Of a DNA stretch of 64,000 nucleotides, positions 24,859 through 34,083 are shown in pieces; position 1 is the stretch's first letter, and every line of letters starts with the position of its first letter. Position numbers and translations under genes: made by a program. The notes beneath the pieces are model-generated. The model saw only the letters and a list, made by a program, of their open reading frames with translations, was not told where the DNA came from and made no database searches. Source of the stretch: Polymyxa betae A26-41 (taxonomy: Eukaryota > Protista > Endomyxa: Phytomyxea); the NCBI GenBank assembly GCA_003693705.1, contig RBZT01000564.1, positions 1 to 64,000 on the forward strand, given 5' to 3'.

Positions 24859-27603
24859 ATGGCCACAACCGACCTGGCCAGCGTCGATTGGGTCAAGCGC
24901 TCCGTCCAACGCGTCCTGGACCAGCTCAACTGGAAGTACCTGGCGGAGGAAGACGTCGGCGCCCGCGAGATCGTCTGCATCTTTGGGGCCGGCGATCTTG
25001 GCAACTGGGTCCTTATTAACCGAATCTTGGCCCCGAAAGGCGTCCTACTGATCATGGCGACCTGCCAGGAGAACGTCCCTGTAAACCAGCGCCAGGCCGC
25101 TATCGAATTCGTAACGCGAGCCAACTTTGGCATTCTAAACGGCTTCTTCGATATGGATTTGACCGATGGCGACCTTCGTTTTTCGTCGCGCGTCGAATAC
25201 GGCTTGATGGTCGACGCCGCCCAGTTCGAGGTGAATTTCCGCCAGACGTTCCAAATCGTTCATGGGACGTTCAGCAAATATTTGCCAGCCGTCGTTGGAG
25301 TCACGAAGAAAGCCATGACCGGGCGGCAGGCCGTCGAACTCATCGAAGGCGGCGCTAATATGCTGCCGAACGCCAGCCAGACTCCACTGCTGGCGACCGT
25401 TGCCCGGCATCTGTCGGCGACCAGCACGAACTATGTTTCGCATTCTGAGAAGGGCATTATTCGAATGCCGTGTACGATTAGCGGCACCACCTACCATCTA
25501 CGAATTAAGGCGATGGAGGACACCCAGCATCTCTACGTGTTCTGCAATTACCCGCGAACCGGCGGTAAAGTCCCGCTGGCCTTTATCGAGCCAATCACTG
25601 AGTACATCACGCGGGCGAACTGGGCTCTGCCGTTCGGCTATTTCGATATGGATTTGGAAGATGGCGAGCTTCGGTTCGTAATCTGGCTTCCTGTACATGG
25701 CGTCCCGGTGCTGGTCATACAGACCCACTTTGTTCGGGCTCTGATTGTTTCTGCTATAAGTGCGTCTGGACTCATTTTCTGCTGCATGGTTTTTTATCTT
25801 GTCGTTAGCGTCGTTTGTGAAGTATCTGCCCGGGATCGATGCGATTATTTCGGGGCAGCAGACGAGCGCCGAGAAAGCGATCAGTGCTGTCGAGAACGAG
25901 CTGAATCACGAACTCGGCAGCGAGAGCATCGCTCGCATCATGGACGCCGGTCTCGCCAGCAGCGACGACGAGGATCAGGATACGGGCGCTCGAGTCCGGC
26001 TGAATCTCGCCAAGCACACGCTGGAGAACGATTCGGTCGATTTCACCGAATCAATCAAAGGCAACCGGAAACTGGACGACGACGATGCCACCAGAAATCG
26101 TAACTTTCATCACGTAGTCGCTTCGATGTAAATTCATCAGACTGAATAGGTGTTTGTGTCAAGACGCTCTATAATGCCGACGGCTCGGGGACCGGAGCTC
26201 TGGAATTTATCGGCAATAAAGGCGGGTCTGAGCCTTGGACGAATCCGGTCGAGGCCGGCCAGGTTCTGGTATCGTCATCGTCACAGCCGGTCGGCGCGAC
26301 CGGCGAAATCGCTGATGTTGTCGGGCAGAATCTGTCCAAGCTTTATGTGACGTCGCCAACGCAGCAGCCATGGGTCGTCATCGATCTGCGGCAATGCTCG
26401 CTGCGGCCGACCCATTACCGACTCTGCCATCACACGCTAAACGATTCGGATGCGTTGCGGTCCTGGCAGCTGCAGGCGTCCAACGACGGACGCAGCTGGG
26501 TCGTACTCGACGAACAGGTCGGCAATCGGAGTCTGTCGGCGAAGTCGCCCAAGAGCACCTGGGCGATCGCTCAAAGCCTGCCGCCGGTGTCGTATTGCAT
26601 GTTCCGGCTGTTGATGACCGGCCCCAATTCCAGCCATCGTATGCAGCTGGCCATCACGAATATGGAGCTGTTCGGCTATTTAACAGTCTGTTTCCCCGTT
26701 GAGCCGCATTTAATCGATCTCTCCAATAACGTCGGTAGCGATGAAGGCGTCGTCAAGCCTCAGCTGAACGTCCCGGTTAGCGATATCGAATGCGACTGGC
26801 TATCGGGCTCTCATATAGGAAGCGGAATTCACGGCGATGTGTTTCGGGGCATGTACAATGGCGTCGCTGTTGCTTTGAAACGCATCTCTTACCGATATTG
26901 GTTGAGAGACCAGATAAGTCATATTCGGGCGTCTCTCGAGGAGAATTTTGTCAATCTGAGTTCAGTGAAATCACCCGAGCTGGTTCGCGTTCTTGGCTTA
27001 TGCGATGACAGTCGCCAGCAAGCGTTTATCATCATATGTCAGCTGGTATCGACATCAAACTCGCTGCTTCTGCCTCAATCGACACCTATGAAGAGCCGCT
27101 TGGCTCTGGCAGCACAGGCAGCGAACGCTGTAGCCACATTACATCAGCGGGGTCTGGCTCATGGCTCGTTACATCTGGGCAACGTGCTGATCTCATATGA
27201 TAACTCCAATCTGTTTATCTGCGATATGGGCTTGTCATCCTGCCTATCTCCGGTTTTGGTTGGTCGTCCTGTGCAGATTGATATCGGATTTACTGCTCCA
27301 GAGTCGATTCATTCCAGCATCTTAACAAAACCCGCTCAAGCTGATAAAGTTGCTGCTGATCTATACAGCCTCGGGATGATTATCTACGTGTTGACAGCTG
27401 GAAAGCTGCCGTTTGACGATGTAACGGATATGGCAGCTCCAACTCTACTGACGAAAATCGCAGTCGGTCTACGACCGAACCTTCCCAGCTCATTACCCGA
27501 GTCGTTATCGACATTACTGAAGTCTTTATGGGATCCAAGTGCTGCCAATAGGCCAGATGCCAATTTAGTTGTTCAGGCTCTCAACAAAATTACTGTCAGA
27601 TGA
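24859..27603 (+). CDS. ~881-aa fusion protein: YbjN-like x2, discoidin/galactose-binding-like domain, TKL-like pseudokinase
   Basis: Introns 25760-25808 and 26100-26149 join three ORF pieces in frame. Two repeats of VP..EFVTRANFGILNGFFDMDLTDGDLRF / EYITRANWALPFGYFDMDLEDGELRF. Then WTNPVEAGQV..WVVIDL..LRSWQLQASNDGRSW. Kinase motifs GSGIHGDV, VALK, HGSLHLGN, DMG, APE. Confidence 0.82.
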
Positions 27604-27747
27604 GATATAGAATAAATATTCAGTATAGTGATTAAAACTCTAACAATTTATTAAGAAAAAGCTGTCTAATGGCTTGTGCAACCAGATTTTCACCGAAAGT
27701 TCTGGGAGGAAATCATCGACGCGTGCCATAACATCGAATTTGTTTTG

Positions 27748-28329
27748 ATGATGCGAACTTTGCTGGATGTGCCGCCAATCCATCGGCAGTCGGTTGGTCC
27801 TAATGCTATTTACCGTCGCCGAAAGACACCAATGCCTGGCGATATCAAGCTGCAAATCTCGGACGAGGCTCAAGACGATGCCAGGCCGGTTCTCGACACC
27901 AACGGTCAAGTCCTATTTGTCGGCTGCTCACCAAATGCCGGCCGCCGACAAATGGTCGTCCGACGTCCCACAATTCGGCTGAATCGTGAAGCCGGCCCGA
28001 TCATCCGCCTGACTCCTGATGGAGGACCGACAACGTTAATGACGCCTCGACGTAATACAGGGATGCCAACGGCGGCTCCATTGCCGAACATAGTCAACAG
28101 ATACCTCGGCGGAAAGCATCTGCAGCCGGATCCCAACCCGATGATGGCGAATCCAGCGATGATGAACCCGACCATTACGATCTCAGGACCGACACGGGCG
28201 GCGCCGACGCCCTGCATGGTGTCTGGTTGCGAGAATCCGGCCTCAGGCAATGATTTATGCACGTTGCATTATCAAAGAGCGCTGAGAATTCAAGCGCAGA
28301 TCAATCAACCGATTAACGACAGATCATAA
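27748..28329 (+). CDS. Hypothetical Pro/Arg-rich protein with C-terminal Cx4Cx9Cx2H zinc-finger-like motif
   Basis: Open frame 27676-28329 with first ATG at 27748. Contains CMVSGCENPASGNDLCTLHYQR. Confidence 0.5.
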   Translation: MMRTLLDVPPIHRQSVGPNAIYRRRKTPMPGDIKLQISDEAQDDARPVLDTNGQVLFVGCSPNAGRRQMVVRRPTIRLNREAGPIIRLTPDGGPTTLMTPRRNTGMPTAAPLPNIVNRYLGGKHLQPDPNPMMANPAMMNPTITISGPTRAAPTPCMVSGCENPASGNDLCTLHYQRALRIQAQINQPINDRS

Positions 28330-33051: not shown

Positions 33052-34083
33052 ATGGCCAGCAACGCCGCTCGTTCCATGGCCGGACCCGGATCTAGCCTGG
33101 CCCGTCTGGCGGCCACGGCCGTCGCCGGCGGTGCTCTCGCGTACGGCGCCTATAACTCGCTATTCACGGTCGAGGGTGGTCACCGGGCCGTCATGTACAA
33201 TCGTATCGTCGGTGTTAAGGAGGCCGTCTACCCTGAAGGGACGCATTTCATGGTGCCCTGGTTCGAGCAACCCACCATCTTCGACGTTCGAACCAAACCG
33301 AAGAAGATCTCGTCGCCGACCGGAACGAAAGATATGCAGATGGTGCAGATCTCGCTGCGGTCGGTTTTCTCGTTTCGCGTTTATCGCCCGCATTGATCGA
33401 ATGAGCTCAGGGTTCTGTACAAGCCGGACGTGTCGGCGCTCCCCAAGATTTTCCAGCGATTCGGGGCCGATTACGACGAACGCATTCTGCCGTCGATCGC
33501 CAACGAGACGCTGAAGGCGATCATCGCCCAGTACAACGCCGCCCAGCTCATCACCAAACGTGAAGAAGTGTCGCGAGAGATCCGCAACCATCTGCAGAAA
33601 CGCGCCAAGGTTCGCAGTCGCGAGTCGTACTCGCCTTTCGCGGGGTCGTGCTGACCCCGTCCGCGTGTTTAGGATTTCTACATTCTGCTGGACGATGTGT
33701 CGATTACGCATCTGAGCTTCGGCTCCGAGTACACGGCGGCGGTCGAATCGAAGCAGGTTGCGCAGCAGGAGGCGGAACGAGCCAAGTTCATTGTCGAGCG
33801 CGCCCTGCAGGACAAACGATCGACGATCATCCACGCGCAGGGTGAAGCGCAGAGCGCCGAGATGATCGGGCGGGCGCTGTCTGCCAACCCCGGTTTCGTT
33901 GAGCTTCGTCGTATGGAGGCTGCCAGAAAGATCTCGTCGTCGTTGGCGGCGTCGCCGAACAAGGTGTACCTGTCGGCGAACTCGCTGCTGTTGAATCTGG
34001 GCGAGGAGCCGTCGTCGCAGTCGACATCGGCGATCGGCAAGACGCAGACGATCATGGCGACCTCGCCTGCAGAAGCTTCATAA
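33052..34083 (+). CDS. PHB2: Prohibitin-2 (SPFH domain), 3 exons
   Basis: [71 protein letters not shown]. Confidence 0.92.

What the first reader, a model, noticed from the sequence alone, without database searches (positions are those of the whole stretch)
24859..27603. Bacterial-type YbjN tandem domains fused to a discoidin-like domain and a pseudokinase
Seen: two ~150-aa repeats sharing VP..EF/YITRAN..G.FDMDL.DG.LRF and KYLP. Canonical 49- and 50-nt introns join them in frame to a HECTD1-like discoidin/galactose-binding domain and a kinase fold. The kinase keeps VALK Lys, catalytic-loop Asn, D(M)G and APE, but HRD is HGS, so the catalytic Asp is absent. No signal peptide or TM is evident. 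Knowledge: YbjN (PF10722) is a mainly bacterial domain with a type III secretion chaperone-like fold, a fold that typically dimerises and binds client proteins. Inference: a horizontally acquired single-chain pseudo-dimer wired to a pseudokinase switch, possibly an intracellular sensor or decoy for protein ligands. None of the ORF-track fragments shows this architecture.
Basis: partly seen in the sequence, partly recalled or inferred. Interest (0 to 1): 0.8.

Follow-up and report, generated by a model that had tools for sequence, protein, structure and literature searches.

The report
Tandem YbjN domains fused to pseudokinase
A root-parasitic protist (almost certainly Polymyxa betae) has a real three-exon gene joining two copies of a mostly bacterial chaperone-like domain (YbjN) to a sugar-binding-type beta-sandwich and a catalytically crippled protein kinase; this architecture is conserved in its relatives and I found no description of it in the literature.

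Summary
Window 24859-27603 (+) is one 881-codon gene of three exons with two GT-AG introns (49 and 50 nt). A GC-rich ortholog has introns at the same positions and phase, and a third ortholog lacks intron 1 and reads straight across that junction.

The gene encodes, in order:
- two YbjN / type III-chaperone-fold domains (AF2 pLDDT 90; Z 13-14.5 to DR_1245, YbjN and AmyR);
- an acidic linker;
- a galactose-binding-like (discoidin/CBM32/DOC/SUN-type) beta-sandwich;
- a divergent TKL-like kinase whose HRD is HGS.

The catalytic loop is degenerate in all three orthologs, so the pseudokinase state is old. The YbjN pair is the best-conserved part: 77% identity, against about 40% for the kinase.

Two other environmental eukaryotic genes carry YbjNx2 followed by an apparently active TKL kinase, one behind a PH domain and one behind a myristoylation-type start.

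"Horizontally acquired" is only partly supported. The nearest other relatives are about 150-aa YbjN proteins at 25-35% identity, bacterial where checked. The gene is vertically inherited in this lineage, and the tree cannot resolve donor or timing.

A sensor/scaffold function is inferred, not shown. It is a new variant of a known kind, of moderate interest.

The parts
24859..25759 (+). Exon 1 (300 codons plus the first base of a split codon): start codon and both YbjN repeats up to the last helix of repeat 2
   Evidence: The N-terminus is colinear with orthologs P0001 and P0002.
24886..25362 (+). YbjN repeat 1 (aa 10-168)
   Evidence: Pfam PF10722 at 1.5e-7, 32.1 bits, above the cut-off of 22. 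Custom profile 5.6e-34. In the AF2 model it aligns to DR_1245 (Z 14.5), E. coli YbjN (Z 13.1) and AmyR (Z 13.1).
25378..25759 (+). YbjN repeat 2, exon-1 part (aa 174-300). Its C-terminal helix and the KYLP motif continue in exon 2, to about 25912
   Evidence: BLASTP against repeat 1 at 2e-11. Custom profile 5.9e-23. Same order of helices and strands as repeat 1 in the model. Pfam alone does not detect it.
25760..25808 (+). Intron 1, 49 nt, GT..AG, phase 1
   Evidence: Sequence. The ortholog L006 has a 48-nt GT..AG intron at the same codon position. Ortholog P0002 has no intron here and reads colinearly across the junction.
25809..26099 (+). Exon 2: end of repeat 2 (KYLP at 25820-25831), then an acidic, low-complexity linker (20 D+E in 96 aa)
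   Evidence: Colinear with P0002 and L006.
26100..26149 (+). Intron 2, 50 nt, GT..AG, phase 1
   Evidence: Sequence. L006 has a GTAAGT..TTTCAG intron at the same position and phase. 26100 is the only in-phase GT donor before the exon-2 frame stops at 26129-26131 (read).
26150..27603 (+). Exon 3: beta-sandwich domain, short linker, kinase domain and stop codon
   Evidence: The frame is open only from 26146, and the first in-frame ATG is codon 150 (26599), inside the beta-sandwich, so this exon cannot encode its domain on its own.
26158..26682 (+). Galactose-binding-like (discoidin/CBM32/DOC/SUN-type) beta-sandwich
   Evidence: phmmer against PDB hits the GH92 CBM32-like domain at 1e-5. The family profile scores 4e-14. 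The AF2 model has pLDDT 78.9 and pTM 0.80. Foldseek gives probability 1.0 to CBM32, APC10, SUN2 and muskelin. There are 7 paralogous copies in the genome. 8 of 11 family members hit F5_F8_type_C and 5 of 11 hit Sad1_UNC.
26806..27579 (+). Protein kinase fold, TKL-like, predicted pseudokinase
   Evidence: PF07714 at 2.3e-23 and PF00069 at 9.7e-23. The nearest solved relative is DLK/MAP3K12 at 6.5e-14.
27160..27183 (+). Catalytic loop HGSLHLGN in place of HRDLKxxN: catalytic Asp replaced by Ser, loop Lys by His, Asn kept
   Evidence: Alignment to DLK. Orthologs have HGALHPGN and HGALFPGS. Coordinates.
26818..26880 (+). G-loop GSGIHG (26818-26835) and VALK lysine motif (26869-26880), both retained
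27223..27303 (+). DMG (27223-27231, for DFG) and APE (27295-27303)

Best explanation
This is one genuine, vertically inherited plasmodiophorid gene encoding an 881-aa cytosolic signalling or scaffold protein.

Shown:
- Two YbjN / type III-secretion-chaperone-fold domains in tandem, an acidic linker, a galactose-binding-like beta-sandwich, and a divergent TKL-type kinase domain.
- The kinase keeps the nucleotide-binding residues (G-loop, VAIK Lys, catalytic-loop Asn, DxG Asp) but lacks the catalytic Asp of HRD.
- The three orthologs share the domain order and a degenerate catalytic loop.
- The YbjN pair is the most conserved part.

Inferred:
- The two YbjN domains pack as an intramolecular pseudo-dimer that binds an extended peptide or a partner protein, as YbjN proteins and T3SS chaperones do as homodimers.
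- This module was originally the regulatory or recruiting domain of an active TKL kinase. That state is still seen in two other eukaryotic genes with PH- or myristoyl-type N-termini.
- In the plasmodiophorid line the kinase lost catalysis and now acts as a non-catalytic, possibly still nucleotide-binding, switch or scaffold.
- The inserted beta-sandwich adds a second protein- or glycan-binding surface of the kind that this genome uses in giant RCC1/SPRY/UBA proteins.
- The YbjN module probably came from bacteria, before the three sampled relatives diverged and possibly once for all kinase-linked eukaryotic copies.
For: Gene model:
- Canonical introns, a single in-phase donor, and no start codon for the exon-3 domain.
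- Intron positions and phases are conserved in L006. Intron 1 is absent in P0002, which reads colinearly across it.
- The whole gene is colinear with L006.

Domains.

Orthologs with the same domain order.

Catalytic loop is HGS / HGA / HGA in the three orthologs. The third ortholog has also lost the G-loop, Lys, Asn and DFG.

Conservation against L006: YbjN pair 77%, beta-sandwich 51%, kinase 43% and 36% for its two pieces.

YbjNx2 plus active kinase (HMDLKPDN, DFG) in P0008 and in P0005/L026. A PH half-domain lies upstream of P0008.

Origin of the YbjN module:
- The nearest non-orthologous relatives are about 150-aa YbjN proteins at 25-35% identity, bacterial where context or cluster taxa could be checked.
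- Holding all 11 kinase-linked eukaryotic YbjN domains as one clade is not rejected: p-AU 0.55, lnL 3.4 better than the free tree.

The shared repeat motif maps to the helix-loop-strand that forms the AmyR dimer interface (PMC5398634; secondary structure).
Against: - No transcript evidence was available, so splicing rests on sequence and comparison.
- No binding, nucleotide-binding or activity data exist.
- The window kinase is not specifically close to the P0008 kinase (31 bits). The two fusions could therefore be independent.
- In the tree, the two repeats of P0008 and of P0005 pair within each protein rather than repeat by repeat. That pattern suggests separate duplications or concerted evolution.
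- The backbone of the YbjN tree is unresolved, so origin and direction of transfer are not shown.
- GC3 drops from about 0.7 to about 0.5 at the start of the kinase domain. This is unexplained.
Confidence: 0.6

Rival explanations
1. The kinase domain is an atypical but active kinase that compensates for the missing HRD Asp. The protein would then be a YbjN-regulated enzyme rather than a scaffold.
For: The G-loop, VAIK Lys, catalytic-loop Asn, DxG Asp and APE are all retained in the window protein and in L006. The related YbjNx2-kinase genes look active.
Against: The catalytic Asp is Ser, Ala and Ala in the three orthologs, and the loop Lys is His, His and Phe. The third ortholog has lost nearly every catalytic motif while keeping the gene. 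The kinase evolves about twice as fast as the YbjN pair.
Confidence: 0.2
2. The three exons belong to separate genes (a YbjN gene and a discoidin-kinase gene), and the fusion is an artefact of reading introns into the sequence.
For: No transcript data were available. Prokaryote-style gene callers split the orthologous loci into several genes.
Against: Exon 3 has no in-frame ATG before codon 150, in the middle of its first domain. Exon 2 carries the C-terminal helix of repeat 2, which is contiguous in the intron-less ortholog P0002. Both introns are conserved in position and phase in L006.
Confidence: 0.05
3. The YbjN part is a recent bacterial transfer into this genome, or bacterial contamination of a draft assembly binned from mixed DNA.
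For: The assembly was binned from mixed root DNA (PMC6328671). The closest large protein clusters are bacterial YbjN.
Against: The YbjN exon carries a spliceosomal intron and is joined to eukaryotic domains. It is 77% and 56% identical to orthologs in two other eukaryotic genomes with the same architecture and partly the same neighbours. No bacterial hit exceeds about 35% identity.
Confidence: 0.03
4. The YbjN-kinase fusion arose independently in plasmodiophorids and in the P0005/P0008 lineage. In plasmodiophorids the tandem YbjN gene (like the stand-alone paralog on contig C882) was fused late to an already degenerate discoidin-pseudokinase gene.
For: The kinases are not specifically related. 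Their nearest solved relatives differ: DLK against RIPK1. Repeats pair within proteins in P0005 and P0008. There is a GC3 step at the kinase boundary. A stand-alone tandem YbjN gene exists in the same genome.
Against: The tandem modules of all five proteins align colinearly, including the segment between the repeats. One clade for all kinase-linked YbjN domains is not rejected. Both kinases belong to the TKL group by nearest solved relatives.
Confidence: 0.3

Closest known systems
YbjN family (PF10722): E. coli YbjN (6VU7), Erwinia AmyR (5FR7), Deinococcus DR_1245 (4H5B)
   Same: Same fold: Z 13-14.5 at rmsd 2.7-3.9 A over 130-136 residues for repeat 1. Pfam match above the cut-off. Same conserved helix-loop-strand motif, which forms the dimer interface in AmyR.
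   Different: The known proteins are about 150-aa stand-alone bacterial proteins that form homodimers. Here two diverged copies sit in one eukaryotic chain, interrupted by an intron and followed by eukaryotic signalling domains.
Class I type III secretion chaperones (CesT, SicP, ExsC, SycE) and the two-copy 'TY-Chap2' chaperones of bacterial conflict systems (PMC9503650)
   Same: Same alpha-beta fold (Z 9-12.8). The known proteins wrap extended client peptides around a dimer. TY-Chap2 is likewise two copies in one chain.
   Different: No secretion system or conflict-system context, and no detectable sequence similarity. The organism is a eukaryote.
TKL-group kinases (DLK/MAP3K12) and pseudokinases that keep nucleotide-binding residues but lack the catalytic Asp (HER3 is the textbook case, from my own knowledge)
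   Same: Kinase fold, with DLK the nearest solved relative at 6.5e-14. G-loop, Lys, Asn, DxG and APE are kept, and the HRD Asp is replaced.
   Different: The N-terminal architecture (YbjNx2 plus beta-sandwich) is unlike any described TKL or pseudokinase that I could find. Only 25% identity to the nearest kinase in its own genome.
Intracellular galactose-binding-like modules: APC10/DOC, SUN domain, muskelin discoidin, and the HECTD1/HERC-type domains (the last from my own knowledge)
   Same: Beta-sandwich fold at Foldseek probability 1.0. Paralogs in this genome sit in giant RCC1, SPRY, UBA and RanBP-finger proteins and hit Pfam Sad1_UNC and F5_F8_type_C.
   Different: The sequence is closest to a bacterial CBM32-like domain in PDB. 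The fold search does not separate CBM32, DOC, SUN and discoidin. No ligand-binding residues were assessed.
Environmental eukaryotic proteins P0008 (PH-YbjNx2-kinase) and P0005/L026 (Myr-type start-YbjNx2-kinase)
   Same: A tandem YbjN module directly upstream of a TKL-type kinase in one gene, aligning colinearly with the window protein across the tandem module.
   Different: They have intact HxDLKPDN and DFG motifs, membrane-targeting N-termini and no beta-sandwich. They are only 22-24% identical over the YbjN pair. Their organisms are unknown.

Membership tests
YbjN (Pfam PF10722) | Match to the family profile above the curated cut-off | tested here: met
   Repeat 1 scores 32.1 bits against a cut-off of 22, E 1.5e-7. 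Repeat 2 alone does not reach Pfam. It scores 5.9e-23 against a profile of 70 single-domain relatives and 2e-11 against repeat 1.
YbjN (Pfam PF10722) | Type III-chaperone-like alpha-beta fold | tested here: met
   The AF2 model has pLDDT 90.3. VIA-align gives Z 14.5, 13.1 and 13.1 to DR_1245, YbjN and AmyR for residues 1-153. Repeat 2 has the same order of secondary-structure elements but was not searched on its own.
YbjN (Pfam PF10722) | Dimer formed through the conserved helix and following strand | not testable with these tools
   The motif is present in both repeats and the two-domain model has pTM 0.70.
Protein kinase superfamily (PF00069/PF07714) | Profile match above the cut-off over the whole domain | tested here: met
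   83.3 and 81.3 bits over profile positions 4-259.
Catalytically competent protein kinase | VAIK Lys, HRD Asp and DFG Asp all present | tested here: not met
   The Lys (VALK) and the DxG Asp (DMG) are present. The HRD Asp is Ser (HGS) in the alignment to DLK. It is Ala in both orthologs.
Pseudokinase (sequence definition) | Kinase fold lacking at least one of the three catalytic residues, conserved as such | tested here: met
   Absence of activity itself was not tested.
TKL kinase group | Closest to TKL kinases in a kinome-wide classification | tested here: inconclusive
   The best solved relatives are DLK (55 bits), then LCK/ABL (about 50) and TNNI3K and KSR (about 46-48). No kinome phylogeny was made.
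F5/8 type C / galactose-binding-like superfamily | Profile match above the cut-off | tested here: inconclusive
   The window copy scores 17.9 bits against a cut-off of 28.2. 8 of 11 family members match, the best at 6.3e-10. The family profile against the PDB GH92 CBM32-like domain scores 4.3e-14.
F5/8 type C / galactose-binding-like superfamily | Beta-sandwich (jelly-roll) fold | tested here: met
   The model has pLDDT 78.9 and pTM 0.80. Foldseek gives probability 1.0 and TM 0.55-0.77 to CBM32, APC10, SUN2 and muskelin.
   No HECTD1 sequence was available through the tools. The only evidence is indirect: Sad1_UNC hits in 5 of 11 family members and paralogs in RCC1, SPRY and UBA giants.

The most novel reading that the evidence does not exclude
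Tandem YbjN domains define a previously unrecognised, rare eukaryotic kinase family (membrane anchor - YbjNx2 - TKL kinase). In it a chaperone-fold pseudo-dimer of bacterial origin acts as the peptide-sensing regulatory domain. In plasmodiophorid plant parasites the family became a pseudokinase scaffold with an added DOC/discoidin-like substrate-binding module. If so, it gives the first direct handle on what the very common but functionally obscure YbjN fold senses.
Probability: 0.3. Interest if true: 0.7.

Novelty: new variant of a known kind. Interest (0 to 1): 0.55.

Why it matters
YbjN is the most widespread member of the type III-chaperone clan in bacteria, yet its function is obscure (PMC13466201). 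Finding it as a conserved single-chain pair wired to kinases in eukaryotes links the fold to a readable output: kinase regulation or scaffolding. That suggests concrete experiments to identify its clients.

For plasmodiophorids, which are obligate root parasites and virus vectors of crops, it adds a lineage-conserved signalling protein with no counterpart in the host.

It is also a clean example of a mostly prokaryotic domain being domesticated, acquiring introns and being recombined with eukaryotic modules.

Tried and rejected
- **Joined protein.** The spliced 881-aa protein was never searched or folded.
- **Pfam YbjN on the whole genome** gave no match at genome-wide E-values. Protein and profile searches then found the paralog.
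- **Word search on the beta-sandwich** (residues 1-182 of exon 3) returned nothing, although the whole-exon search had found P0151 and P0152. I treat this as a limit of the tool.
- **Cluster look-up** gave no names or taxa for any relative.
- **The protein atlas** returned only bacterial YbjN clusters or generic kinases. No large YbjN-kinase cluster exists there.
- **The metagenome scan** found only YbjN relatives at 23-39% identity, nearly all single-domain in length, and no further eukaryotic loci.
- **AU test on the 97-row tree** did not finish in about 1150 s. A 43-row set under LG+G4 was used instead.
- **Complex prediction** (repeat 1 against repeat 2) was unavailable.
- **Weak full-length structural matches** to Arp2/3 ARPC2 and Mediator MED14 (rmsd 12-17 A) were rejected as not meaningful.
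- **Contamination or recent HGT** was rejected (see rival explanations).
Full report
**Gene model**

The ATG at 24859 is the first after in-frame stops. It opens a frame that encodes 300 residues up to 25758. A GT at 25760 and an AG at 25807-25808 bound a 49-nt intron. A GT at 26100 and an AG at 26148-26149 bound a 50-nt intron. Both introns are phase 1. Spliced, the CDS is 2646 nt, or 881 codons plus stop. I did not build, search or fold the joined protein; every analysis was done exon by exon, by reference.

Three features of the sequence argue for one gene:
- Exon 2 begins with the C-terminal helix and the KYLP motif of the second repeat. In the intron-less ortholog P0002 this is contiguous with the rest of that repeat.
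- The exon-3 frame is open only from 26146, and its first in-frame ATG is codon 150, inside the first domain it encodes.
- 26100 is the only in-phase GT donor before the exon-2 frame stops (read).

Comparative evidence is stronger still:
- A GC-rich ortholog (L006, 64% GC) is colinear with the window from 24870 to 27603.
- L006 has GT..AG introns at exactly the same two codon positions and phase.
- A third ortholog (L004/L005, 43% GC) lacks intron 1 and reads straight through the junction.
- Short introns fit the group: Plasmodiophora brassicae averages 60 bp (PMC4471660).

No transcript data were available.

**Organism**

The assembly has 27,085,814 bases in 1001 contigs. The published Polymyxa betae draft has 1,001 contigs and 27,085,946 bp (PMC6328671). 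The window is therefore almost certainly from P. betae, a plasmodiophorid (Rhizaria). That assembly was binned from mixed DNA. Contamination is excluded here by the introns, the eukaryotic domains and the conserved orthologs.

**YbjN repeats**

- Repeat 1 passes Pfam PF10722 (32.1 bits, cut-off 22).
- Repeat 2 does not reach Pfam alone. It matches repeat 1 at 2e-11.
- Against a profile built from 70 single-domain relatives, the repeats score 5.6e-34 and 5.9e-23.
- An AF2 model of exon 1 (57-row alignment) has pLDDT 90.3 and pTM 0.70, with the same alpha-beta3-alpha-beta2-alpha order twice.
- Residues 1-153 align to DR_1245 (Z 14.5), E. coli YbjN (Z 13.1) and AmyR (Z 13.1). Type III chaperones follow at Z 9-12.8.
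- The motif shared by the repeats (..TRAN..G.FDMDL.DG.LRF) lies on the helix-loop-strand that forms the dimer interface in AmyR (PMC5398634). Together with pTM 0.70 this makes an intramolecular pseudo-dimer plausible.

**Linker**

The rest of exon 2 is acidic and low in complexity, with 20 D+E in 96 residues.

**Beta-sandwich**

The first 180 or so residues of exon 3 match a CBM32-like domain of a GH92 mannosidase (1e-5). There are seven paralogous copies in the same genome. They sit in very large proteins with RCC1, SPRY, UBA, RanBP-finger and jacalin domains, and those copies hit Pfam Sad1_UNC and F5_F8_type_C.

A profile of the family scores 4.3e-14 against PDB. The AF2 model (pLDDT 78.9, pTM 0.80) matches CBM32 modules, APC10/DOC, SUN2 and the muskelin discoidin domain at probability 1.0. 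So the domain is a galactose-binding-like beta-sandwich. The fold search does not separate CBM32, DOC, SUN and discoidin.

**Kinase**

Pfam gives 2e-23, and the nearest solved relative is DLK/MAP3K12. In that alignment the G-loop (GSGIHG), VALK, the catalytic-loop Asn, DMG and APE are kept. HRDLK is HGSLH, so the catalytic Asp is Ser.

| Locus | G-loop | VAIK | Catalytic loop | DFG |
|---|---|---|---|---|
| Window | kept (GSGIHG) | VALK | HGSLHLGN | DMG |
| L006 | kept | VALK | HGALHPGN | DMQ |
| L005 | lost | lost | HGALFPGS | lost |

The loss of catalysis therefore predates the split of these three taxa. The domain has stayed an open frame while evolving fast. Its closest paralog in the genome is only 25% identical.

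**Conservation**

Against L006, the YbjN pair is 77% identical, the beta-sandwich 51%, and the two kinase pieces 43% and 36%. The 'bacterial-type' module is thus the most constrained part.

There is no TM segment or signal-like N-terminus.

**Relatives and origin**

An exhaustive profile-free search of 1.84 billion representatives found 733 proteins at E<=1e-3, 19 at E<=1e-10 and 3 at E<=1e-30. The closest are the orthologs and their fragments (P0001-P0004, P0006).

Next come P0005 and P0008. Both have two YbjN domains followed by a kinase with intact HMDLKPDN and DFG.
- P0008's kinase is closest to RIPK1. An upstream half PH domain is split from it by an intron.
- P0005 starts with MGNSSSK, a myristoylation-type motif.

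Of the rest, the 150 best hits that are listed are mostly about 150-aa proteins at 25-35% identity. Where context or taxa could be checked they are bacterial:
- cluster taxa;
- an antitoxin neighbour;
- two adjacent YbjN genes on a bacterial contig.

The metagenome scan added no further eukaryotic loci. The P. betae genome has one other YbjN locus, a stand-alone tandem gene on contig C882.

In a tree of 97 domains, the plasmodiophorid repeat-1 copies form a clade, and so do the repeat-2 copies (SH-aLRT 99 each). The duplication is therefore older than these taxa. The backbone is unresolved. In a 43-row set, holding all 11 kinase-linked eukaryotic domains together gave a slightly better likelihood than the free tree (p-AU 0.55). 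One origin is therefore compatible with the data but not shown.

I found no paper describing a YbjN-kinase fusion or eukaryotic YbjN proteins. A 2026 review calls the clan predominantly prokaryotic and YbjN understudied (PMC13466201).

**Interpretation**

The architecture and the pseudokinase call are well supported. A recent or private horizontal transfer is not supported. The gene is vertically inherited in this lineage, and a simpler YbjNx2-active-kinase architecture exists in other eukaryotes.

The most economical reading has three steps:
1. A YbjN module of probable bacterial origin became the regulatory, client-binding domain of a TKL kinase.
2. In plasmodiophorids the kinase became a non-catalytic switch or scaffold.
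3. A protein- or glycan-binding beta-sandwich was inserted.

An independent fusion in the two groups remains a serious alternative.

**Not done**

- The joined protein was not searched or folded.
- No kinase structure was predicted.

Noticed in passing
window 26752-27600 versus 24859-26751: Third-position GC drops from 0.66-0.86 over the YbjN, linker and beta-sandwich coding parts to 0.42-0.58 over the kinase domain, within one exon. Possible causes are relaxed codon selection or a different history of the kinase part.
   Followed up: partly
G000:C882:66221-67420 (L009:4231-5415): A second YbjN gene in the same genome: a stand-alone tandem of two YbjN-like domains with no kinase downstream. 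It is probably the locus of earlier notes s1-696139, s1-665233 and s1-665299.
   Followed up: partly
L008:135-3041 (P0008) and L026:36-2606 (P0005): Two environmental eukaryotic genes with YbjNx2 followed by an apparently active TKL kinase. One sits behind a PH domain split by an intron; the other starts with the myristoylation-type motif MGNSSSK. Their organisms are unknown.
   Followed up: partly
G000:C824:216000-236000 (L022, L023); also C846 and C941: A cluster of giant ORFs (1486, 2687, 705 and 524 aa open frames) combines the same beta-sandwich module with RCC1 repeats, SPRY, UBA and jacalin domains. These are HERC-like architectures.
   Followed up: partly
L029:4956-5966: A bacterial metagenome contig with two adjacent, separate YbjN genes (180 and 151 aa). 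This is the kind of gene pair whose fusion would give a tandem protein.
   Followed up: no
window 27676-28329: The ORF directly downstream of the gene has no Pfam match. The ortholog locus L006 also has an unannotated ORF in that position.
   Followed up: no
window 33151-34010 and L005:7276-8021: A Band_7 gene lies a few kb downstream of the YbjN-pseudokinase gene in both the window and the third ortholog's contig. This is partial conserved synteny.
   Followed up: no
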